Shown here in pieces: positions 4,461-64,000 of a stretch of DNA of 64,000 nucleotides. The translations under genes and the position numbers were made by a program. The stretch is from positions 1-64,000 of the IMG/VR virus record IMGVR_UViG_3300031707_000001; one strand, given 5' to 3'. The stretch's first letter is position 1; every line of letters starts with the position of its first letter. The notes beneath the pieces were generated by a model. The model made no database searches, was not told the DNA's origin, and was given only the letters and a program-made list of their open reading frames with translations.

Positions 4461-4900
4461 GAATAAACATACTATGCGTTGACTTGGATGATACGATCAC
4501 CGACTACCCGGGATGGGAAGGTGAAGGATATACGATCGTGAAAGGTACGCCTTTAGCAGGTATTCACGACGCCATCGCTACGTTGCGCAACGAGGGTTGG
4601 CTGATTTTGGTGCACTCCACCCGGTGCAACTTCAAAGGCGGCGTAGTGGCCACAGCTAAATTCCTGGAAGACAACGGCATTCGGGTTGACGGCGTGTGTT
4701 TCAACAAGCCGCCGGCCGACATATACCTGGACGACAAAGGAATGACCTTTGATGGTAACTGGTCAGGAATGCTGGATAAAATACGGAAGTTCAAGTCCTG
4801 GAAAAAACTACAGGAGATAGAATGTCAAAATTCATCGACGAAACCGGCAGAGTTGCCCCCGCCCTTGGCGACTTCCTTGCCAGTGAACGTGAAAGACTAA
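4457..4900 (+). CDS. HAD-superfamily phosphatase
   Basis: VDLDDTIT (DxDxT) and KPPADIYLDDK motifs. Confidence 0.75.
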   Translation: MRINILCVDLDDTITDYPGWEGEGYTIVKGTPLAGIHDAIATLRNEGWLILVHSTRCNFKGGVVATAKFLEDNGIRVDGVCFNKPPADIYLDDKGMTFDGNWSGMLDKIRKFKSWKKLQEIECQNSSTKPAELPPPLATSLPVNVKD

Positions 4901-6363
4901 CCAAGGCGCCAGGCAATATCTGTAATCCAGCCCACGATCGGGGCGTTGAACCACACGATCCATTCCAGCGGTACAACTACCCCTATATCCACGAGCTTGG
5001 GACTTTCAGCAGCAAGCCGTGGAACGTATTGCTCAAACAGACACCTGAGGACCTCATCCCGGCCGACCCCTTCGAGGTTAGCCGGGTGAGGGGTCCTGGA
5101 CACTCTCAACTATGGGACGCCGGCATTTGCGTGCCGGCGTGCTCCCATAGGAAATGCAATTTGGTAGGTCTTCGGGATTTGCCCGTACTACGAAATAGCA
5201 ACACACACTGGTCTGGCAATATGCATGAGGCGTTGGGACATGCTGGTGTGGAAATCAACGGGAAGTGTACCCGTATTCAAGGGCCATGGATCTTTGATTT
5301 AACCACTATGGGTGAATATGGTTGGTTCCTGGCGGAAGCTATGCATGCCTGGGCTCACTACCGGGCTGACTTCAAAGCGCTTACCAAAGGCGCTGCTGTA
5401 ATGGTAGATTCCAAAACCATTGGTCGACTACAGCAAGCTTTGGGTTTGCTAGCCGTTTCACACTTCTACGGTTTACCTTTGTTTATTGGCGAGGAAATCG
5501 AGGATACAAGGGCATATTCGTACTTCCGTCAATATGGCATTGATGTGAAGACGACCACTGAGTTCACGAACCCTATTGTAGCTGAACCCTGGATAGGCAA
5601 CGAGGCCCCTAGATTTGATCATACGCTGGCAACTGTAGTAGTTGCTATACGCATTGAGCCTCCGCCTCTGGCGCTGCATACCGGCATAGTCCAGTCCAGA
5701 CCTGAAGATCGTTGGGCGGGCTTTCCCACTATGGCTGCCATTGTTGGTTGGGAACGTATGGACGTAACGCTGCATCAGCCGCTAGTTGCGTACTATCCGG
5801 ATAATCCAGATAGTACGCCTTGCTATGGTTTGCATCCGGCCGATCTGATGACTCCAGAAAGCTTTTGGAGCTTTCTGGCACTCGGTCGTAGAGCTAGGGG
5901 ATTGCCAATCGTTGATGACCAAAACATGACGTTTGAGAATTGGATGCTATCTCCTCACGGCATAGCACGAATCAATGAGACGCCACCACGGCCTTGTTCG
6001 CCGTGTCTGGGATGGCAGAAACGTTCAGAAGCATATCACAAGCGTCCGAAAAAATATGCTTCGAAGGCCGAAAAGGAAGCGTACCATAAGGATGTTCTTA
6101 CCTTTCGAAAGGTAGTACGAAAAGCTGAGCGGGACTATCAAGCCAAAATCTATGGCAGCAATACGGCTCGAAATCGGGTAAACAAGCAACGTAATGCGGC
6201 GCATAAGTTAAAGCTGGAACGAGACCGTCAAAAGAAACTTCTGATGGAAGCCAAGCAGAAAGTTAAGGACGGGAAACAATTGACAGAACGACAGCAAAAC
6301 GCATATACTCCTTATCGTGAAATGATTCGAAACCGAAAGGAAAACGAATGCTCTATTACATAG
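4822..6363 (+). CDS. Hypothetical protein
   Basis: 513 aa open frame, basic C-terminus. Confidence 0.75.
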   Translation: MSKFIDETGRVAPALGDFLASERERLTKAPGNICNPAHDRGVEPHDPFQRYNYPYIHELGTFSSKPWNVLLKQTPEDLIPADPFEVSRVRGPGHSQLWDAGICVPACSHRKCNLVGLRDLPVLRNSNTHWSGNMHEALGHAGVEINGKCTRIQGPWIFDLTTMGEYGWFLAEAMHAWAHYRADFKALTKGAAVMVDSKTIGRLQQALGLLAVSHFYGLPLFIGEEIEDTRAYSYFRQYGIDVKTTTEFTNPIVAEPWIGNEAPRFDHTLATVVVAIRIEPPPLALHTGIVQSRPEDRWAGFPTMAAIVGWERMDVTLHQPLVAYYPDNPDSTPCYGLHPADLMTPESFWSFLALGRRARGLPIVDDQNMTFENWMLSPHGIARINETPPRPCSPCLGWQKRSEAYHKRPKKYASKAEKEAYHKDVLTFRKVVRKAERDYQAKIYGSNTARNRVNKQRNAAHKLKLERDRQKKLLMEAKQKVKDGKQLTERQQNAYTPYREMIRNRKENECSIT

Positions 6364-41077: not shown

Positions 41078-41446
41078 GGGGCTGTCACGGTGTCGACTCA
41101 GGGATGAGCGAACCAGTAGCATGCCGTGCAATGCACAGTTGGGCACGTTAAAATCATCCTGTGTACAAGTAAGTGGTAACACACTGAAACTCGCTGCCTA
41201 GCAATAGGCAACTAGGAAACCGGGCGACTCCGATAGCCCGGGAGTACGACTATTCATCGGAAACCACAGGTGAGGCTGGACCCTGAGAATAATCCAGACC
41301 AGGTTGTCTGACCTGGTTGAAAAAACAGACTGGTGGACGTGCTAGGAAACTGGCGCCCCCTCGGTTGCTGGACCTAAACCAGATAAGCATGTAGTTGCTG
41401 TTAGCAAACTCTGAACACGGGAGTTCAACTCTCCCCAGCTCCACCA
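41078..41446 (+). ncRNA. ssrA: tmRNA; tag ORF 41175-41201 GNTLKLAA*
   Basis: GGGGCTG/CAGCTCC-A-CCA with G3.U70, T arm, GCATGC/GCATGT helix, GTAAGT resume context. Confidence 0.93.
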
Positions 41447-43360: not shown

Positions 43361-44809
43361 GTGTCTGAAGATCTTGAAAGAATGAGCCGGCCGCAACTGG
43401 TAAAAGTCATCAAAGATATGCAGACGGAGCTGGATCAGATATCCAGTGACGTCTCAGTAAAGCGGGGAACGTCAGATATCGTCCTTCCGAACAATATGAG
43501 CTACGATGAGGCCATCGAATGGCTCTATCGGAAGAAGGAAGAAGACGAGACTGTCGTGGACCTGCAGCACCAAATCCAATGTCACCCGCTGGACGGGGCA
43601 TATGCCTTATTGAAGGCTATTCAGAAACGCTTTGGCTGGGCCAACATGATTCCCACTCCGGGATTCTTTGGTCCGACGCCACCGAGTATGATCACAATGC
43701 GTGTGGGTCCTGAAGAGAGTGATACGGTTATGGTGCCCTGGGGGCACATGCAGATTCCCGGTTTTGCCGGCATCATCTACGTTGACTACCAGGCGGTTGA
43801 TTCAATACCGGCATTTGTTATCGGCGCCAGCACCAAGAAGAAGGATCAGGCCAAGTTCTATGAACTGGCCAAGCTGGCACAGCACTTCGTGGAGACGGAA
43901 TCCGTCTACCACCGCAAAGCCCTGAGCATGAAGCTCGACTGGGTCAGGGAAGGACGCAAGTTCGATCCCAGAGTCGATGGATTCAAGTTCATCAATTTGA
44001 GTGGGGTCAAAGAGGATCAGCTGATCTTCGATAAAACGACCACTGACATCCTGGAAGCCACACTGTTCTCGTTCATCGAGAACGTGGAGACATGCCGGAA
44101 GCTGCATATCCCGTTGAAGCGTGGTGTATTGCTGGAAGGACCCTATGGCGTTGGCAAGACGTTGACAGCGTACATTACGGCCAAGAAGGCAATTGACAAC
44201 GGATTCACGTTTATCCTCATTGAGGATTCCCGTGATCTGGACAAGATCATCACCATGGCTCGGCGCTATCAGCCGTGTGTTCTCTTCTGTGAGGACATCG
44301 ACCGCATAGTATCGGGACAGCGTGACATTACCGTTGACAGCCTGCTCAATACCATTGACGGGTTGCAGTCGAAGGGTGGTGAGATGATCCTGGTGCTTAC
44401 CAGCAACAACGTGGAGAACATCAATCAGGCCATGCTGCGGCCGGGCCGGCTCGACGCCGTGATTCGGCTGGAGTCTCCTGATGCAGAGGCCGTGGAACGT
44501 TTGATCCGGTATTATGCTGGGTCGTTGTTGTCGCCCACTTCCAACATCAGTTCGGCAGCAGCCAAGCTGCAGGGTAACATTCCGGCTACAATCCGGGAGG
44601 TTATCGAGCGTGCCAAGATGATAAGTATGACCAAGGGTCGTATGGGCGATGGGTCCATTACCGGTGACGACCTGGACATATCGGCCGAATCCATGAAGCG
44701 TCAACTGCAACTGTTGATTCCGAAGCCTCAGGTGCAGGACAGACTTCAGCTCTTTGGAGCGGTGGTTGGCGAGCACATCGCCGAAGCCATCACAAACTTC
44801 AAGGAATAA
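43361..44809 (+). CDS. AAA+ ATPase (CDC48/FtsH-type module)
   Basis: GPYGVGKT Walker A, LFCEDID Walker B, MLRPGRLD SRH. Confidence 0.9.
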   Translation: MSEDLERMSRPQLVKVIKDMQTELDQISSDVSVKRGTSDIVLPNNMSYDEAIEWLYRKKEEDETVVDLQHQIQCHPLDGAYALLKAIQKRFGWANMIPTPGFFGPTPPSMITMRVGPEESDTVMVPWGHMQIPGFAGIIYVDYQAVDSIPAFVIGASTKKKDQAKFYELAKLAQHFVETESVYHRKALSMKLDWVREGRKFDPRVDGFKFINLSGVKEDQLIFDKTTTDILEATLFSFIENVETCRKLHIPLKRGVLLEGPYGVGKTLTAYITAKKAIDNGFTFILIEDSRDLDKIITMARRYQPCVLFCEDIDRIVSGQRDITVDSLLNTIDGLQSKGGEMILVLTSNNVENINQAMLRPGRLDAVIRLESPDAEAVERLIRYYAGSLLSPTSNISSAAAKLQGNIPATIREVIERAKMISMTKGRMGDGSITGDDLDISAESMKRQLQLLIPKPQVQDRLQLFGAVVGEHIAEAITNFKE

Positions 44810-46756: not shown

Positions 46757-47839
46757 ATGAAGAAAGAATCGAAAGATATTATGATCTCGTTCGACACGAC
46801 AGGGAGCATGTACCCCTGTCTGACCCAAGTGCGGCGCAACGTATCCGCCTTGGTAACCCGGTTGTTCAAGGACATTCCGGACCTGCGAATCGGTATTATT
46901 GCTCACGGTGACTACTGTGACAAGAATCTGACGTACATTACGAAGATGCTGGATCTGACCAACGACAAGGATAAGATCGTCCATTTCGTAAACAACGTGG
47001 AAGCTACAGGGGGTGGAGATTCCCCGGAGTGCTACGAGTTTGTGTTGAACCAGGTACGTACGCTGGCTTCCTGGTCAAGTGGCAAGTCGAAGATCCTGAT
47101 CATGATTGGTGACGATGTGGCGCATAGCCCAAGGGAAACGCAGAACTTCAAGAAGCTGGAATGGCAGAACGAGATCGGCCTGATCAAAGAAGCAGGTATC
47201 AAGGTCTATGCCGTGCAGGCGCTGGGACGCAGCCATGCAACCAGTTTCTGGCGTACAATGGCATTTAAGTCGAACGGCTACTACATCACGCTGAATCAGT
47301 TTGCGGACATTCAGCACATGATCACAGCGGCTGGCTACAAGCAGCGGGGTGACAGTTTCCTGCAGGACTATGAAAAGGAACTGATTACCAATGGTGTGAT
47401 GAACCGGGACCTGGATTCAGCGATCGGTACCATGTTGGGACGAGAAACAAGTTCCAGGTTCAAGGTCAGTCGTACTCGCTTGGGTGCTGTGGACAGTGGA
47501 CGTTTTCAGGTTATGGAAGTGGACGAAAGATGTCCCATCAAGGAATTTGTGGAAGCACAAGGTGTTACATTCAAGGTAGGACGTGGATTCTATGAGTTCA
47601 CGAAGTCATCGGTTATTCAGCACTATAAGGAAGTAATCCTGATGGATAACCGGACTGGTGACCTGTTCAGTGGAGACAAAGCCCGGGAGCTGGCTAACAT
47701 TCCGATCGGGGTAACAGCCAAGCTGGGCCCGACACTGGTACCTGGCTACACAGTATTTGTGCAGTCAACATCATATAACCGGGCGCTCATGCCAGGAACG
47801 AAGTTCCTGTACGAGATTCCGGATTGGGAACGAGTTTAG
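46757..47839 (+). CDS. von Willebrand factor A domain protein
   Basis: FDTTGSM (MIDAS), GDYCD, GGGDSPECYE, IGDD. Confidence 0.85.
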   Translation: MKKESKDIMISFDTTGSMYPCLTQVRRNVSALVTRLFKDIPDLRIGIIAHGDYCDKNLTYITKMLDLTNDKDKIVHFVNNVEATGGGDSPECYEFVLNQVRTLASWSSGKSKILIMIGDDVAHSPRETQNFKKLEWQNEIGLIKEAGIKVYAVQALGRSHATSFWRTMAFKSNGYYITLNQFADIQHMITAAGYKQRGDSFLQDYEKELITNGVMNRDLDSAIGTMLGRETSSRFKVSRTRLGAVDSGRFQVMEVDERCPIKEFVEAQGVTFKVGRGFYEFTKSSVIQHYKEVILMDNRTGDLFSGDKARELANIPIGVTAKLGPTLVPGYTVFVQSTSYNRALMPGTKFLYEIPDWERV

Positions 47840-52244: not shown

Positions 52245-52460
52245 ATGGCGTACAAGTTCAATAATGGAACAGGCGCTGTGATTTGTGATCACTGCGGCAT
52301 TACGATTGACGAAGGTCTTAGCTACACGGAATACGAAGAATGTTATGGAAGCGAGCAGAAGAAGGACTACTGCACCAGATGCTTCCACCCGGCAAACCGA
52401 CAGAAAGTTAAGGAGGAATCCGATGGCGAGCGATTTGATAGTGCCCGTTGTGAAGCTTGA
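52245..52460 (+). CDS. Hypothetical Zn-ribbon protein
   Basis: KFNNGTGAVICDHC. Confidence 0.6.
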   Translation: MAYKFNNGTGAVICDHCGITIDEGLSYTEYEECYGSEQKKDYCTRCFHPANRQKVKEESDGERFDSARCEA

Positions 52461-53547
52461 ACAGTTGAGACCTCACCCCAATGCTGACAAGTTGGAGTTG
52501 GTCAACGTATTGGGATACCAGATGTGTGTGCCCAAAGGATTGCACAAGGATGGCGACGTCATGGTGTACTTCCCTGCGGATACACTTATTCCGGCTACGT
52601 GGGCGGATTCTTTTGGCGTACGCAAGTACCTGAAGGGTAAGGATCAGGATCGTGTCGGCCGAATCAAGCTGCGGGGTGAGCCTTCGTTTGGACTGGTAGT
52701 CCAGCCGCCTAAGCTACCTGCTGATGTAAAATTCAATGTTGGCGACAATGTGGCTGACTACTATGGTGCCAAGAAGTACGAGCCGCCGGTTCGTGCTACT
52801 GCCGGCGATGCTGCTGCCCGGGATCCTTTGATCGATCCATTCTTTGAGCAGTTCACGGACGTGCAGAACGGACGTATGTTTACGGATATCTTCGTTGATG
52901 GCGAGGAAGTCATCTGCACGGAGAAGATCCACGGTACCAACTGCAAGGTTGGATGTATTGATGGTAAGCCTGTGGCTGGATCTATGGGCGTACGCAGAAA
53001 GCGTCCAACAAAATTATTTGAAGGTCAGGAAATTCCTTGTAAACTAACTGATGATGCAATTGCTACAAACACCTATTGGTTTCCGTTTAGCCTTCCTGGT
53101 GTTAGAAGCCTCATGTCTGACTTTGCAGAACAGGAAATCAAAGAGCCTGTACTGCTCTACGGAGAAGTATATGGTGGTAGTATACAGAGTCTGGACTACG
53201 GTATACCTAAAGGTAAGGGCTTGGGCTTTCGAGCATTTGGACTCAAAGTCAATGGTAGGTTTTTGGACTGGGACGTTTTCGCAGATACATGTATAAAATA
53301 TGGTGTTAAGATGGTTCCAGTTCTTGGGCGTGGCCCTTTCAGTATGGAGAAGGCCAAACACTATGCAGACGGAACATCTGTTCTTTGGACCGATGCGGGA
53401 GTTAAGGTAGAACATATGCGTGAAGGTTGTGTAATCTATCCGGTCAAGGAACGTGAACACCCGAAGATCGGGCGGGTCATCCTAAAGTATATCGGAACCG
53501 AGTATGAGCTTAGCAAACACAAAGAACAAGACACAAAGGACGTTTGA
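52423..53547 (+). CDS. RNA ligase, DRB0094 family
   Basis: N-terminal OB-like HPNADKLE; motif I TEKIHGTN, YGEVYG, REGCVI, LKYI. Confidence 0.9.
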   Translation: MASDLIVPVVKLEQLRPHPNADKLELVNVLGYQMCVPKGLHKDGDVMVYFPADTLIPATWADSFGVRKYLKGKDQDRVGRIKLRGEPSFGLVVQPPKLPADVKFNVGDNVADYYGAKKYEPPVRATAGDAAARDPLIDPFFEQFTDVQNGRMFTDIFVDGEEVICTEKIHGTNCKVGCIDGKPVAGSMGVRRKRPTKLFEGQEIPCKLTDDAIATNTYWFPFSLPGVRSLMSDFAEQEIKEPVLLYGEVYGGSIQSLDYGIPKGKGLGFRAFGLKVNGRFLDWDVFADTCIKYGVKMVPVLGRGPFSMEKAKHYADGTSVLWTDAGVKVEHMREGCVIYPVKEREHPKIGRVILKYIGTEYELSKHKEQDTKDV

Positions 53548-54718: not shown

Positions 54719-54780
54719 GGGTGCGTAGCTCAGTGGTAGAGCCATGGAAACCGTGGGTTCGAATCCCGCCGCATCCACCG
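54719..54780 (+). ncRNA. Anticodon-less tRNA-Ala-like RNA
   Basis: GGGTGCG/CGCATCC (G3.U70), A73, canonical D and T arms joined by about 9 nt; ends CCG. Confidence 0.75.
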
Positions 54781-58527: not shown

Positions 58528-59274
58528 ATGGGTAAGTTATGCGAAGTGTTAGCGGTAGAAGGTGAATTGGACTCGACCTGCAAGGCAGTCCTGGAAGAAG
58601 CGACGAAGACGTTCAAAGATAAGGCTGCTCACTTTGTGGGTCAGACTAAAACCTACGAACCCTTCGAAGAAGGTACGCCAGGGTTGCCCGAAGAACACCT
58701 GGCCATGGTCACAACGGTAAACGAGAAGCTGGCCTACGTGTTTGAACACCTGGTCAAGCTGATTGATGCCAAGGCCCAGAAGGACGCTACAAATCAGGTA
58801 GCCAAGGCCGACATCGTGACGGATAGCGGAACGTTGGCTACGGGTGTGCCGGCCACGACATTGTTGGGGTTGGAAGCAACCCTGCGTCAGGTGAAGGCAT
58901 TGGCGCTGGAAGTGCCCACGTTGCCTCCAGGCATCGAATGGAAGAAGGATCCTGCCTTGGGCAAGGACATCTATCATCGGGTACATCCCGCCGTGACGTT
59001 CAAGACCCGTAAGACCTTCCGACACAAAGTGCTGGTGGAGCCCACCAAGGAACACCCTGCTCAGATCGAAAAGTGGAGCGAGGACGAGAACATCGGCAAG
59101 TTTATCACAGATGCATGGTCAGGCATGTTGACGCCGGCCGAGAAGAGTGATATGATTGGCCGCATTGATACGTTGGCTCGGGCTGTGAAAGAGGCCCGGC
59201 AGCGTGCCAATACAACCGAAGTTGTGAAGATCAAGCTGGCGAAGAGTCTGATGGACTACATTCTGCCGGCATAA
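58528..59274 (+). CDS. Conserved hypothetical protein (family I recognise from bacteria and phage; function unknown)
   Basis: KLCEVLAVE..TYEP..KDATNQVAKADI..LLGLE..HPAQIE..WSG..AVKEARQRAN. Confidence 0.8.
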   Translation: MGKLCEVLAVEGELDSTCKAVLEEATKTFKDKAAHFVGQTKTYEPFEEGTPGLPEEHLAMVTTVNEKLAYVFEHLVKLIDAKAQKDATNQVAKADIVTDSGTLATGVPATTLLGLEATLRQVKALALEVPTLPPGIEWKKDPALGKDIYHRVHPAVTFKTRKTFRHKVLVEPTKEHPAQIEKWSEDENIGKFITDAWSGMLTPAEKSDMIGRIDTLARAVKEARQRANTTEVVKIKLAKSLMDYILPA

Positions 59275-59382
59275 TGCTTTTGGGTAGACTTATCCTTATC
59301 GTTATGTTCTGATCGTGCTCCCGACTAAGTCTCGGAAAGAGCGATCAGATATCATCGTTATCGTTATAGTTTTGCCCAAGCA
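59275..59382 (+). ncRNA. Structured RNA with hexamer repeats in a symmetric internal loop
   Basis: TTGGGTAGAC/GTTTTGCCCAA; TCTGATCG/CGATCAGA; TTATCS/ATCGTT units on both loop strands. Confidence 0.65.
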
Positions 59383-59415
59383 ACCTCAGGCGGATGCGTC
59401 ATCCGACAAGGCGGG

Positions 59416-59548
59416 TGCAGGTTCTAATTTAATGTGCGTCGTGGGTTCAATTCCCACTCCGGTCTCCTTCGTACACAAGCCGGGTATTGTGTTCGAAGAG
59501 ACCGGGTAGCTCAGTGGTAGAGCACACAGATTCAACATGAAGCCTGCA
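59416..59548 (+). ncRNA. Circularly permuted tRNA-like RNA (T arm, closed acceptor, then D arm)
   Basis: GTGGG-TTCAATT-CCCAC, TCCGGTC/GACCGGG, TA-GCTC-AGTGGTA-GAGC, TGTG/CACA, TGCAGG/CCTGCA. Confidence 0.78.
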
Positions 59549-59630
59549 ATTCCAGCTCAAGGAGACGAGGAGCCAAATGGATTGTATCCTATGAAGCCTT
59601 CGGGCTGATTAGAAAACATGAAATATCATT

Positions 59631-59668
59631 GGGGGCCCAGATTGGGAATTGATCTGGGCCCCTATTTT
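59631..59668 (+). terminator. Rho-independent terminator
   Basis: GGGGCCCAGAT/ATCTGGGCCCC followed by TATTTT. Confidence 0.75.
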
Positions 59669-59673
59669 ACACT

Positions 59674-63642: not shown

Positions 63643-63760
63643 GGCAGGGTAGCTCAGTTGGTAGAGCACGTAATCGTACAGTTTGTATGAACTGGCTACA
63701 GCAACCAAAATTACCCTTATAAGGTCGTGGTCGTGGGTTCGAATCCCACCCCTGCCACCA
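63643..63760 (+). tRNA. tRNA-Ile(UAU) with a 42-nt insert in the anticodon stem (63671-63712)
   Basis: Removing the insert gives CG|ACC-CTTATAA-GGTCG and a canonical cloverleaf with CCA. Confidence 0.8.
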
Positions 63761-63762
63761 AT

Positions 63763-63874
63763 CGGATCGGAGTGTAACGGTAGCACAGCGGTAAATATGT
63801 ACAGATTGTATAATCTGTCTACAGCCATCAAAATGGAACCGCAGGACCAGGTTCAATTCCTGGCGATCCGACCA
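63763..63874 (+). ncRNA. tRNA-like RNA (Pro-like C1-G72/A73) with a 45-nt module replacing the anticodon loop
   Basis: CGGATCG/CGATCCG-A-CCA, D arm, GCGGT/ACCGC, T arm CCAGG-TTCAATT-CCTGG. Confidence 0.78.
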
Positions 63875-64000
63875 TTCTTAATTTCAGGTGCAAGTGCGTT
63901 ATAATACATGTAGGAAATAATACTCTCGCCGACCCGGCAGATGAAATCACAAATACAGCTGCCACGGTTTTCGGCAGAGCATCCTACAGAAGAACAGCCG

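What the first reader, a model, noticed from the sequence alone, without database searches (positions are those of the whole stretch)
59416..59548. Circularly permuted tRNA fold (YrlA Y-RNA-like architecture)
Seen, in order: closing strand, TGTG, V loop CGTC, T arm, acceptor 3' strand TCCGGTC, connecting hairpin (CTTCG/CGAAG, ACACAA/TTGTGT), acceptor 5' strand GACCGGG, canonical D arm, CACA, and closing strand CCTGCA. Established: YrlA Y RNAs have a closed acceptor, T and D arms and a terminal stem in place of the anticodon arm and work with Ro60; permuted tRNA genes are known in Cyanidioschyzon and some archaea. No Ro60 gene is visible in this window. Inference: a phage Y-like tRNA mimic or a permuted tRNA matured by the phage RNA ligase.
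Basis: partly seen in the sequence, partly recalled or inferred. Interest (0 to 1): 0.82.

Follow-up and report, generated by a model that had tools for sequence, protein, structure and literature searches.

The report
Phage tRNA-mimic RNA paired with DUF7873
The flagged stretch is a real, conserved gene for a circularly permuted tRNA look-alike RNA (the YrlA/Y-RNA type), and in diverse phages it always lies just downstream of one uncharacterised protein gene (DUF7873), not next to the Ro60 protein that Y RNAs are known to work with.

Summary
The order is closing strand, 4-bp anticodon-stem remnant, V loop, T arm, a 7-bp acceptor stem closed by a 35-nt hairpin, D arm, closing strand. Rfam's YrlA model matches end to end (35.3 bits, below its cut-off of 69), about the same score as phage elements that sit beside genuine Ro60 genes.

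The same architecture recurs in at least 27 divergent sequences. 97.8% of pair cells are standard pairs, 19 of 20 pairs show double changes, and the Levitt 15-48 pair covaries perfectly.

The main new result is genetic linkage. The RNA lies directly downstream of, and on the same strand as, a DUF7873 gene (window 58528-59274). This held at 30 clear DUF7873 loci, with one ambiguous, and in none of 101 control tRNA loci. No other neighbouring gene is conserved.

A Ro60-fold gene does exist, 5 kb downstream and just outside the window. However, the nearest cultured relative has separate YrlA-like RNAs beside its own Ro60 gene, and one complete genome carries the cassette with no Ro60 at all.

Best reading: a Ro60-independent class of YrlA-like tRNA mimic that works with DUF7873. 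No RNA data were available, so processing and binding are inferred. It is a new variant of a known kind.

The parts
58528..59274 (+). DUF7873 (PF25283) gene, 248 aa. It is the conserved upstream partner of the RNA.
   Evidence: Pfam E = 2.2e-71. The same family lies directly upstream of the RNA in 15 of 20 RNA-ascertained loci and in 0 of 101 control loci (Fisher p = 2.9e-15). The AF2 model has pLDDT 90.6 and no fold match in PDB or BFVD.
59275..59415 (+). Leader between DUF7873 and the RNA. It contains short ATCGTTAT-type repeats (about 59297-59305 and 59354-59367) flanking an imperfect hairpin (59309-59348). It also has a small hairpin GGATG/CATCC (59392-59404) and GACAAG (59405-59410). It contains no terminator.
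   Evidence: Sequence. Comparable short degenerate repeats start this spacer in nearly all family members. No terminator-like hairpin occurs between DUF7873 and the RNA in any of 27 loci. GACAAG occurs in 5 of 24 relatives, which is not above the shuffle maximum.
59416..59421 (+). 5' strand of the terminal (closing) stem, UGCAGG. It pairs with 59543-59548.
   Evidence: MFE structure. An equivalent distal helix is predicted in each relative, but it cannot be aligned across them.
59433..59436 (+). Strand of the anticodon-stem remnant equivalent to tRNA positions 40-43 (UGUG). It pairs with CACA at 59525-59528.
   Evidence: This helix is paired in 89.6% of cells, and all 4 pairs show double changes across 27 sequences. 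At least 4 contiguous bp form in 74% of cognate pairings against 7.6% of cross-pairings.
59437..59457 (+). V loop CGUC (C48 at 59440) and the T arm (stem 59441-45 with 59453-57, loop UUCAAUU 59446-52).
   Evidence: The T stem is paired in 100% of cells in 27 sequences. The T loop is UUCRANU. The 15-48 pair is G-C in 24 sequences and A-U in 3, with no exception.
59458..59506 (+). Closed acceptor arm. The 3' strand UCCGGUC (59458-64) is followed by a 35-nt linker beginning UCCU that folds into an extension hairpin (59465-99), then the 5' strand GACCGGG (59500-06).
   Evidence: All 7 acceptor pairs are kept in 100% of cells and all 7 show double changes. Linker length ranges from 12 to 49 nt. Position 74 is C in 26/27, position 75 is C in 18/27 and position 76 is A in 22/27.
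59507..59528 (+). U8 A9, the D arm (GCUC/AGUGGUA/GAGC, 59509-23), A26, and the 5' strand of the anticodon-stem remnant, CACA.
   Evidence: U8 is present in 27/27 sequences, and A14 and G18 G19 in all D loops. The D stem is paired in 99.1% of cells.
59529..59548 (+). 3' side of the large internal loop (59529-42) and the 3' strand of the closing stem, CCUGCA (59543-48).
59632..59669 (+). GC-rich hairpin (11 bp) followed by UAUUUUA. This is the likely terminator of the DUF7873-RNA transcript.
   Evidence: Sequence. It aligns as the terminator stem of SdsR_RyeB. My own scan finds it, and finds similar hairpins 80-190 nt after the RNA in 10 of 27 loci, often with an AGGAUA-type loop. The tool's stricter scan (loop of at most 8 nt) did not list it.

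Best explanation
The element is a gene for a structured non-coding RNA. It is a circularly permuted tRNA mimic of the YrlA/Y-RNA type. It belongs to a phage-borne class that forms a two-gene cassette with the upstream DUF7873 gene.

Shown:
- The RNA has a complete tRNA body: T arm, 7-bp acceptor stem, D arm, U8, A14, G18G19, a covarying 15-48 pair and a T-loop UUCRANU.
- Its acceptor end is closed by a variable linker that usually begins N-C-C-A.
- Its anticodon arm is replaced by a 4-5 bp stem that continues into a long irregular helix formed by the 5' and 3' flanks.
- Wherever DUF7873 was found, this RNA lies 60-600 nt downstream on the same strand. No terminator lies between them, and a terminator-like hairpin often follows.
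- No other neighbouring gene is conserved.

Inferred:
- DUF7873 and the RNA are co-transcribed.
- The RNA folds into the tRNA L-shape and is handled by host tRNA enzymes. The perfectly kept 7-bp acceptor stem and the NCCA point to RNase P cleavage and 3'-CCA maturation, as shown experimentally for Mycobacterium smegmatis YrlA.
- The RNA acts together with DUF7873 as a ribonucleoprotein during infection, independently of Ro60.
- The place of the cassette (inside tRNA arrays, near RNA ligase, tmRNA and, in some phages, a CCA-adding enzyme) points to a role in tRNA or translation maintenance, or in countering host attacks on tRNA.
For: Structure:
- YrlA model match over positions 1-114; z = -5.98.
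- On 27 sequences, 97.8% of pair cells are standard pairs (shuffles 65.7%, slid registers at most 51%). 19 of 20 pairs show double changes. The covariation score is 0.877 against 0.231.
- The Levitt pair covaries in 27/27, and NCCA is conserved.

Linkage:
- Starting from the RNA, 15 of 20 loci have DUF7873 directly upstream, against 0 of 101 controls.
- Starting from DUF7873, the RNA is found in 10/10 IMG/VR loci, 3/3 metagenome contigs and 6/6 cultured phages (Gordonia, Ralstonia, Klebsiella, Vibrio, Rhizobium, Arthrobacter), and 11/11 MAG contigs.
- The DUF7873 proteins are only 30-49% identical to the window's protein, and the surrounding genes are not shared.

Independence from Ro60:
- The complete genome of Gordonia phage Ziko has the cassette but no TROVE or DUF2828 gene.
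- Rhizobium phage RHph_Y65 has the DUF7873-linked RNA and, 4 kb further on, two other YrlA-like RNAs directly upstream of its TROVE gene.

Co-transcription: no terminator-like hairpin between gene and RNA in 0 of 27 loci, and one after the RNA in 10 of 27.

Precedent for processing: M. smegmatis YrlA, the YrlA with a 7-bp acceptor stem, is cut by RNase P and receives CCA in vivo (PMC4201824).
Against: - No RNA-seq run holding this sequence could be listed, so transcription, ends and processing are unobserved.
- Nothing shows that DUF7873 binds RNA. It has no recognisable fold or domain and a near-neutral pI (median 6.8).
- Adjacency could reflect co-mobility or a cis role rather than a complex.
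- In the window copy and several relatives the linker extends the acceptor helix, so NCCA is base-paired. That would hinder RNase P.
- A Ro60-fold gene is only 5 kb away in this genome, and some relatives carry near-canonical GNCGAA motifs, so Ro60 binding is not excluded.
- The alignment used for pair counts was fitted to the model, which favours the structure somewhat. The MAFFT-only alignment gave the same result for the T and acceptor helices; its D-arm sequence was fixed by the search pattern and so is uninformative.
Confidence: 0.55

Rival explanations
1. It is a classical Y RNA. The element is the RNA partner of the phage's own Ro60-fold protein (contig 64545-66146) and tethers it to a host exonuclease, as bacterial YrlA does. 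DUF7873 is an accessory subunit or an unrelated neighbour.
For: - The YrlA model matches with the same score range as phage elements beside real TROVE genes (31-35 bits).
- The 534-aa protein 5 kb downstream has Ro60 structures as its nine best PDB matches (E = 1.7e-8, TM 0.54, full length). Its vWA part aligns to phage Ro60 proteins (hhalign 96.9%).
- Rhizobium phages and L129 also have a TROVE gene 5-6 kb from DUF7873.
- L044, L120 and L130 carry GUCGAAG- or GACGAAU-type motifs on the 5' strand.
Against: - The window copy has GACAAG, not GNCGAAN0-1G.
- A Ro-like gene lies within the sequenced flanks in only 2 of the 20 distinct IMG/VR DUF7873 loci, against 4 of 101 control tRNA loci, and in 0 of 11 MAG loci.
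- Gordonia phage Ziko has none in its whole genome.
- RHph_Y65 keeps separate YrlA-like RNAs, with a GTTACTTC motif, next to its TROVE gene.
- This phage has other odd tRNA-like RNAs directly upstream of its Ro-like gene.
Confidence: 0.2
2. It is a cis-acting 3' element of the DUF7873 mRNA. The tRNA-like fold is an RNase P / 3'-end processing and stabilising signal, like the mascRNA at the MALAT1 3' end or tRNA punctuation, and has no trans function.
For: It always lies downstream on the same strand with no terminator between. The conserved 7-bp acceptor stem and NCCA fit recognition by RNase P and CCA-adding enzyme.
Against: - A simple processing signal would not need a full D arm, the Levitt pair, the long closing helix or second and third tandem modules.
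- Ordinary tRNA genes, plentiful nearby, could serve this purpose.
- In L104, L120 and L123 the RNA is separated from DUF7873 by 460-570 nt that holds another ORF.
Confidence: 0.1
3. It is a decoy tRNA. The RNA alone soaks up a host anti-phage enzyme that attacks tRNA bodies or CCA ends, and DUF7873 is incidental.
For: The tRNA body is perfect but lacks an anticodon. NCCA is conserved. The element sits among phage tRNAs, RNA ligase and tmRNA. A Tad4-family gene lies next to the cassette in L132.
Against: There is no direct evidence. This reading does not explain the strict linkage to DUF7873. The acceptor sequence varies freely, so no specific tRNA identity is mimicked.
Confidence: 0.08
4. It is a true permuted tRNA gene. 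The ends are joined (for example by the phage Rnl-type ligase at 52285-53547), the linker is removed, and the product is a decoding tRNA.
For: The 3' half precedes the 5' half, as in Cyanidioschyzon permuted genes. NCCA follows the acceptor 3' strand. An RNA ligase is encoded 6 kb upstream. In the window the bases after the stem read A-U-UCA-A-C, which resembles an anticodon loop.
Against: The region beyond the stem is not conserved in length or sequence, and in each genome it pairs with the 5' flank into a long irregular helix. The fifth stem pair is mismatched in the window. No bulge-helix-bulge motif is present. The UCA reading is not shared by relatives.
Confidence: 0.03
5. It is a chance juxtaposition of the 3' half of one decayed tRNA gene and the 5' half of another.
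For: The window holds 28 or more tRNA genes and homing endonucleases. Tandem tRNAs do mimic the T-arm...D-arm order (Chen et al. 2014).
Against: The two acceptor strands pair 7/7 with each other in all 27 relatives despite different sequences, and the anticodon-stem strands pair as well. Conservation extends across phages of Proteobacteria and Actinobacteria.
Confidence: 0.01

Closest known systems
YrlA (Rfam RF02553), the tRNA-like bacterial Y RNA of Salmonella Typhimurium and Mycobacterium smegmatis (Chen et al. 2014, PMC4201824)
   Same: - The 5'-to-3' order is the same: terminal-stem strand, V region, T arm, closed acceptor-like stem, D arm, terminal-stem strand.
- The tRNA tertiary nucleotides are the same, and the 15-48 pair covaries.
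- Like the M. smegmatis RNA, it has a full 7-bp acceptor stem.
- The covariance model aligns end to end.
   Different: - It scores 35.3 bits against a gathering score of 69.
- The model's middle helix, which carries GNCGAAN0-1G, is absent or replaced by a large internal loop.
- There is a 35-nt insertion in the acceptor loop, beginning with an NCCA-like sequence.
- It is encoded directly after DUF7873, not beside Ro60.
- It occurs in at least one complete genome that has no Ro60 gene.
Phage Y-RNA-like RNAs next to phage Ro60: mycobacteriophages, CcrColossus, Bacillus phage G (Chen 2014), and Yrl1/Yrl2 of Thermus phage phiLo (PMC12135203)
   Same: These are phage-encoded. They have similar sub-threshold YrlA scores (31-37 bits). 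They often lie in tRNA-rich regions.
   Different: Those lie within about 1-4 kb upstream of a TROVE gene. In the loci examined here they carry a GTTACTTC motif on the 5' strand. The window's class lacks that motif and follows DUF7873. Both classes coexist in Rhizobium phage RHph_Y65.
Circularly permuted tRNA genes of Cyanidioschyzon merolae and some archaea
   Same: The 3' half (T arm, acceptor 3' strand) is encoded upstream of the 5' half (acceptor 5' strand, D arm), joined through a linker at the acceptor end.
   Different: There is no anticodon loop, no bulge-helix-bulge junction and no sign of a decoding product. The host is a phage of bacteria, which lack the splicing endonuclease pathway.
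Two-piece tmRNA from permuted ssrA genes of alpha-proteobacteria and cyanobacteria (from my own knowledge)
   Same: The precursor has acceptor 3' strand-CCA, then an excised linker, then the acceptor 5' strand. Maturation yields a two-piece molecule with a free CCA end. This is a bacterial precedent for processing a permuted tRNA-like gene.
   Different: The element has no tag reading frame or pseudoknots. Its D arm is canonical rather than degenerate. ARAGORN and the Rfam tmRNA models do not call it. The phage has a separate one-piece tmRNA at 41078-41446.

Membership tests
YrlA / bacterial Y RNA | tRNA-like module in the order T arm, closed acceptor-like stem, D arm | tested here: met
   All helices are kept by compensatory changes in 27 relatives.
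YrlA / bacterial Y RNA | Conserved tRNA tertiary nucleotides, with compensatory change at the Levitt pair 15-48 | tested here: met
   G15-C48 in 24 sequences and A15-U48 in 3. U8, A14, G18G19 and the T-loop UUCRANU are conserved.
YrlA / bacterial Y RNA | Long terminal stem formed by the 5' and 3' ends, with a large internal loop | tested here: met
   In the window, a 6-9 bp closing stem and an internal loop of roughly 10 x 14 nt. The proximal 4-5 bp covary. The distal helix is predicted in each relative but cannot be aligned across them.
YrlA / bacterial Y RNA | Ro60-binding motif GNCGAAN0-1G on the 5' strand of the stem | tested here: not met
   The window has GACAAG (59405-59410). Exact or near-exact motifs occur only in some relatives (L044 GUCGAAG, L120 GACGAAUG). 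No 6-mer is enriched above the shuffle maximum.
YrlA / bacterial Y RNA | Score at or above Rfam's gathering threshold (69 bits) | tested here: not met
   35.3 bits. However, elements adjacent to phage TROVE genes also score only 31-37 bits.
YrlA / bacterial Y RNA | Encoded adjacent to a Ro60 (TROVE) gene | tested here: inconclusive
   A Ro60-fold gene lies 5.0 kb downstream, outside the window, with tRNAs and several ORFs between. Most relatives have none within 6-10 kb, and the Ziko genome has none at all.
YrlA / bacterial Y RNA | Physically bound by Ro60/Rsr | not testable with these tools
   This needs immunoprecipitation or a gel shift.
Permuted tRNA gene (Cyanidioschyzon type) | 3' half encoded upstream of the 5' half | tested here: met
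Permuted tRNA gene (Cyanidioschyzon type) | The joined product has a 7-nt anticodon loop on a 5-bp stem | tested here: not met
   The stem is 4 bp in the window. The flanks beyond it vary in length and sequence and pair with each other.
Permuted tRNA gene (Cyanidioschyzon type) | Circular RNA intermediate or re-ligated ends | not testable with these tools
   No RNA run could be listed.
Two-piece (permuted) tmRNA | Tag reading frame and pseudoknots between the tRNA-like parts | tested here: not met
   ARAGORN calls only the one-piece tmRNA at 41078-41446. No tmRNA-family hit was found at the element.
Tandem ordinary tRNA genes (known false positive for YrlA searches) | Each half belongs to its own complete tRNA | tested here: not met
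   No tRNA is called at 59416-59548. The strand after the T arm pairs with the strand before the D arm.
DUF7873-linked tRNA-like RNA (class defined here) | Lies directly downstream of a DUF7873 gene on the same strand, with no terminator between | tested here: met
   In the window the gene ends at 59274 and the RNA core begins at 59416. The same arrangement holds in all other clear cases.

The most novel reading that the evidence does not exclude
DUF7873 and its permuted tRNA-like RNA form a previously unrecognised, Ro60-independent phage ribonucleoprotein. It is spread as a mobile two-gene cassette among phages of Proteobacteria, Actinobacteria and other phyla. The RNA would be cut at its acceptor linker into a two-piece, CCA-ended tRNA mimic. 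DUF7873 would use that mimic to interfere with, or protect, the host's tRNA and translation machinery, for example by blunting tRNA-targeting anti-phage defences.
Probability: 0.4. Interest if true: 0.85.

Novelty: new variant of a known kind. Interest (0 to 1): 0.72.

Why it matters
Y RNAs and their bacterial YrlA relatives have so far been defined by their partnership with Ro60. What the tRNA-like half is for remains an open question. Here the same tRNA-mimic design is tied to a different, completely uncharacterised protein. It is conserved from Rhizobium and Klebsiella jumbo phages to 69-kb Gordonia phages, and it is annotated in none of the GenBank records examined.

This gives three things:
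1. A second, independent protein context in which to ask what a closed-acceptor tRNA mimic does.
2. A concrete functional lead for a DUF family of several hundred or more members.
3. Cultured, tractable phage-host pairs in which the RNA, its processing and its partner can be tested directly.

It also shows that YrlA-type searches anchored on Ro60 miss a whole class of such RNAs.

Tried and rejected
- Nucleotide searches of the locus against the INPHARED phage collection, both near and distant, found nothing.
- Ten large ORFs and ten neighbouring ORFs of the window were scanned with Pfam and PHROGs for TROVE. None was found inside the window. The 513-aa ORF at 4822-6363 has no family or PDB match.
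- The search for related loci with the 9-sequence DUF7873 alignment failed because no stretch was conserved enough. Single proteins were used instead.
- DUF7873 function: the PDB profile search, Foldseek against PDB and BFVD, NCBIfam and two ESM Atlas searches gave no usable lead beyond a weak resemblance to DUF6847 phage proteins. A single weak PfkB hit (E = 0.004, in one homologue only) was discounted.
- The first broad run of covariance model R1 also picked up tandem tRNAs at up to about 50 bits. Only hits next to DUF7873, or with strict E-values, were used for alignments.
- Test for a Ro-binding-like 5' motif: GACAAG occurs in 5 of 24 sequences, which is not above the shuffle maximum, so it is not claimed.
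- Expression: no RNA run was listed. Only sediment DNA runs hold the sequence. Laying their contigs gave one short variant contig with apparently compensatory acceptor changes. This is anecdotal only.
- The UCA "anticodon" reading in the window is not shared by relatives and was dropped.
- The literature library holds no paper naming DUF7873, and nothing useful on DUF2828 or on permuted tRNA genes in phages.
Full report
**1. The observation**

The window is the first 64 kb of a 210,732-bp IMG/VR viral contig. It carries 28 tRNA genes and a tmRNA on the + strand.
- closing strand UGCAGG;
- a 4-bp remnant of the anticodon stem (UGUG with CACA);
- V loop CGUC;
- T arm;
- acceptor 3' strand UCCGGUC;
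- a 35-nt connecting hairpin;
- acceptor 5' strand GACCGGG;
- U8 A9 and a canonical D arm;
- closing strand CCUGCA.

The stretch folds much better than shuffles (-53.9 kcal/mol, z = -5.98). ARAGORN and the Rfam tRNA model find no ordinary tRNA there. Rfam's YrlA model (RF02553) aligns over its whole length at 35.3 bits (E = 3.8e-6 in a 451-nt search). That is below the gathering score of 69. The model's middle helix is unmatched, and there is a 36-nt insertion in the acceptor loop.

**2. It is a family, and the structure covaries**

I scanned viral contigs for a T-loop followed 35-65 nt later by the D-arm sequence. This gave 122 matches. In 20 of them the 7 nt after the T stem pair 7/7 with the 7 nt before the D arm, where 0.13 were expected by chance.

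I then built a covariance model from eight members and aligned 27 distinct homologues. On that alignment:
- 97.8% of pair cells are standard pairs, against 65.7% in shuffles and at most 51% in slid registers;
- 19 of 20 pairs show changes on both sides;
- the acceptor and T stems are paired in 100% of cells.

A MAFFT-only alignment, not fitted to a model, gave the same picture for the T and acceptor helices. Its D-arm sequence had been fixed by the search pattern, so it says nothing about that helix.

The stem made by the 5' and 3' flanks forms at least 4 contiguous bp in 74% of cognate pairings, against 7.6% when strands are cross-paired between genomes.

The tRNA tertiary set is intact. U8 is present in 27/27. 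A14 and G18G19 are present in all D loops. The T loop is UUCRANU. The Levitt pair is G15-C48 in 24 sequences and A15-U48 in 3.

The idea that two unrelated decayed tRNA halves lie side by side is therefore refuted.

**3. What follows the acceptor stem**

The linker is 12-49 nt long and variable, but its first bases are conserved. Position 74 is C in 26/27, position 75 is C in 18/27 and position 76 is A in 22/27, so it reads N-C-C-A. The window has UCCU. In the window and in some relatives the linker extends the acceptor helix as a hairpin.

Chen et al. (PMC4201824) showed that M. smegmatis YrlA, the YrlA with a 7-bp acceptor stem, is cleaved by RNase P and receives CCA in vivo. The strict 7-bp stem and the NCCA here suggest the same treatment. 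This is an inference, because no RNA data exist for this genome.

**4. What lies beyond the anticodon-stem remnant**

In every genome the flanks pair into a long, irregular helix with internal loops, but the helices cannot be aligned with one another. No 7-nt anticodon loop is conserved.

The YrlA Ro60-binding motif GNCGAAN0-1G is not present in the window, which has GACAAG at 59405-59410. Variants occur in some relatives, but no motif is enriched beyond shuffles.

**5. The constant neighbour is DUF7873**

The ORF directly upstream (58528-59274) is Pfam DUF7873 (E = 2e-71).

Starting from the RNA:
- 15 of the 20 RNA-ascertained loci have a DUF7873 ORF immediately upstream on the same strand (nine were confirmed by Pfam);
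- 0 of the 101 control loci have one (Fisher p = 2.9e-15).

Starting from the protein, the RNA follows in:
- 10/10 IMG/VR loci;
- 3/3 metagenome contigs;
- 6/6 cultured phages: Gordonia Ziko, Ralstonia phiRSL1, Klebsiella KpLz-2_45, Vibrio D502, Rhizobium RHph_Y65 and Arthrobacter Talia1610. None of these records annotates the RNA;
- 11/11 MAG contigs.

One Microcoleus phage record is ambiguous.

The DUF7873 proteins are only 30-49% identical to the window's protein. No other neighbouring gene is shared across the lineages. No terminator-like hairpin separates gene and RNA in any of 27 loci. One follows the RNA in 10 of 27, and the window has one at about 59632-59669.

DUF7873 has at least 428 homologues, all unnamed. 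Its AF2 model is confident (pLDDT 90.6). It has no sequence or fold match in PDB or BFVD, no NCBIfam name and no paper in the library.

**6. Ro60 after all, but probably not the partner**

L001 extends past the window. At contig 64545-66146, 545 nt beyond the window's end, lies a 534-aa protein with Pfam DUF2828 + DUF7788.
- It has a MIDAS motif.
- Its vWA half aligns to phage TROVE proteins (hhalign 96.9%, E = 1.9e-10).
- Its AF2 model (pLDDT 87.3) has Ro60 structures as its nine best PDB matches, over the full length (1YVR, 2I91, 2NVO, phage phiLo 9L5Y; E = 1.7e-8, TM 0.54).
- GenBank annotators call homologues of this family "Ro-like RNA binding protein".

So the genome does encode a Ro60-fold protein. 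Four results argue that the DUF7873-linked RNA is a separate class rather than this protein's Y RNA:
- The five RNA-ascertained loci without DUF7873 (two of them duplicates) share a GTTACTTC motif on the 5' strand. TROVE genes were confirmed in two of them.
- Rhizobium phage RHph_Y65 is the closest cultured relative (DUF7873 46% identical, same tRNA-Thr(UGU) neighbour). It has the DUF7873-linked RNA and, 4 kb further on, two more YrlA-like RNAs directly upstream of its TROVE gene. One of these carries GTTACTTC.
- The complete genome of Gordonia phage Ziko has the cassette but no TROVE or DUF2828 gene by profile search.
- Ro-like genes lie within the available flanks in 2 of the 20 distinct IMG/VR DUF7873 loci, against 4 of 101 control tRNA loci, and in 0 of 11 MAG loci.

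With the Rfam YrlA model, DUF7873-linked and TROVE-linked phage RNAs score alike (33-43 and 31-37 bits). The two classes therefore look like paralogous uses of one design.

**7. How it most likely works**

Shown:
- a conserved, structured, tRNA-shaped RNA gene with a closed acceptor end and an NCCA-like linker start;
- obligate genetic linkage to DUF7873;
- no intervening terminator;
- frequent placement within phage tRNA arrays. It lies near an Rnl-type RNA ligase at 52285-53547 and the tmRNA, and in L120/L123 near a CCA-adding enzyme.

Inferred:
- co-transcription with DUF7873;
- folding into the L-shape;
- recognition by RNase P, CCA-adding enzyme and tRNA-modifying enzymes;
- action with DUF7873 as a ribonucleoprotein in tRNA or translation maintenance or in counter-defence.

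I put about 0.55 on this reading. The rivals are:
- classical Ro60 Y RNA, 0.2;
- cis-acting 3' element of the DUF7873 mRNA, 0.1;
- stand-alone decoy, 0.08;
- functional permuted tRNA, 0.03;
- chance, 0.01.

**8. Comparison, novelty and limits**

The element works like YrlA and shares YrlA's architecture. It fails two membership criteria (the Ro-binding motif and the Rfam threshold), and the adjacency criterion is inconclusive. I therefore file it as a new variant of a known kind: a DUF7873-linked class of YrlA-like tRNA mimics.

Limits:
- There are no expression or binding data.
- The pair counts rest on a model-fitted alignment.
- The loci were sampled through capped searches.
- Co-occurrence with Ro-like genes was tested on one complete genome and otherwise only on flanks of 6-10 kb.

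Noticed in passing
window 63643-63760 and 63763-63877 (+); continues to contig 64053-64507 (L001:15526-15980): Two tandem, non-permuted tRNA-like genes have a 7-bp acceptor stem followed by ACCA, and a T arm. Their anticodon loop is replaced by an insert of about 45 nt that contains a GUACAG...CUGUCUACAGC hairpin. Rfam calls the first a 115-nt tRNA, and ARAGORN calls neither. The same hairpin motif recurs three more times, giving 5 copies in about 830 nt directly upstream of the Ro60-like gene. They may be that protein's partner RNAs or a small mobile repeat.
   Followed up: partly
L001:16018-17619 (contig 64545-66146, just outside the window): A 534-aa DUF2828 + DUF7788 protein has the Ro60 fold (HEAT ring plus vWA with a MIDAS motif). 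The family is widespread in phages, with 686 INPHARED records including Felix O1-like, Listeria A511-like and mycobacteriophages.
   Followed up: yes
L067, L136 (Gordonia phage Ziko), L137 (Ralstonia phiRSL1), L138 (Klebsiella KpLz-2_45), L141 (Arthrobacter Talia1610): between DUF7873 and the main RNA: A second permuted tRNA-like module (a third in Ziko) lies upstream of the main one. In three of the five loci (L067, L137, L138) it has a class-II-like D arm (GGCGGAAUUGGUAGACGC type), and in several it has ACCA after its acceptor 3' strand. The window has only one module.
   Followed up: partly
window 59290-59372 and the equivalent spacer in nearly all DUF7873 loci: The spacer after the DUF7873 stop codon begins with 3-6 short degenerate direct repeats (YGTTAK, GACTGA or AAACTA types). 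In the window, ATCGTTAT copies flank a hairpin at 59309-59348. This could be a protein-binding array or part of the RNA.
   Followed up: no
80-190 nt downstream of the RNA in L045, L120, L123, L125, L132, L134, L032; window 59632-59669: The terminator-like GC-rich hairpin after the cassette often has a conserved AGGAUA-type loop. That is unusual for a plain terminator. The window's loop (UGGGAAUUG) differs.
   Followed up: no
L155:4549-4663 and 4728-4802 (Rhizobium phage RHph_Y65, record 138648-138901): Two unannotated YrlA-like RNAs lie in the 1.2-kb gap upstream of the annotated TROVE gene. One carries the GTTACTTC motif shared by other TROVE-linked phage elements.
   Followed up: partly
L120:1082-2527 and L123:3439-4827; L132:9540-9914: A CCA-adding enzyme gene lies a few genes upstream of DUF7873 in two related contigs. 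A Tad4-family (PF25186) gene lies directly upstream of DUF7873 in another.
   Followed up: no
L053:2506-3255 (-) and L044:4137-4868 (-): The DUF7873 reading frames contain one in-frame stop codon each. L012 and L017 have very few long ORFs. This may reflect stop-codon recoding or pseudogenes.
   Followed up: no
window 54719-54777 (+): A 59-nt match to the Rfam tRNA model (48.4 bits) is not called by ARAGORN. It may be a truncated or unusual tRNA.
   Followed up: no
window 43361-44809 and 46757-47839 (+): An AAA+ ATPase and a vWA-domain protein are encoded near each other, resembling a MoxR-vWA type pair. An Rnl-type RNA ligase (TIGR02306) lies at 52285-53547.
   Followed up: no
L108:6358-6744; L074:5520-5696: A GOLLD RNA (214 bits) lies in a phage tRNA array that also holds a TROVE gene. 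A manA RNA lies immediately upstream of another phage TROVE gene.
   Followed up: no
window 59464-59587 in run X3 (sediment DNA): A 151-nt contig from a related strain changes the acceptor 5' strand from GACCGGG to GGGCGGG. Its unaligned upstream end reads ...CCAGTCCCGCC, so the change looks compensatory. This rests on a single short contig.
   Followed up: no
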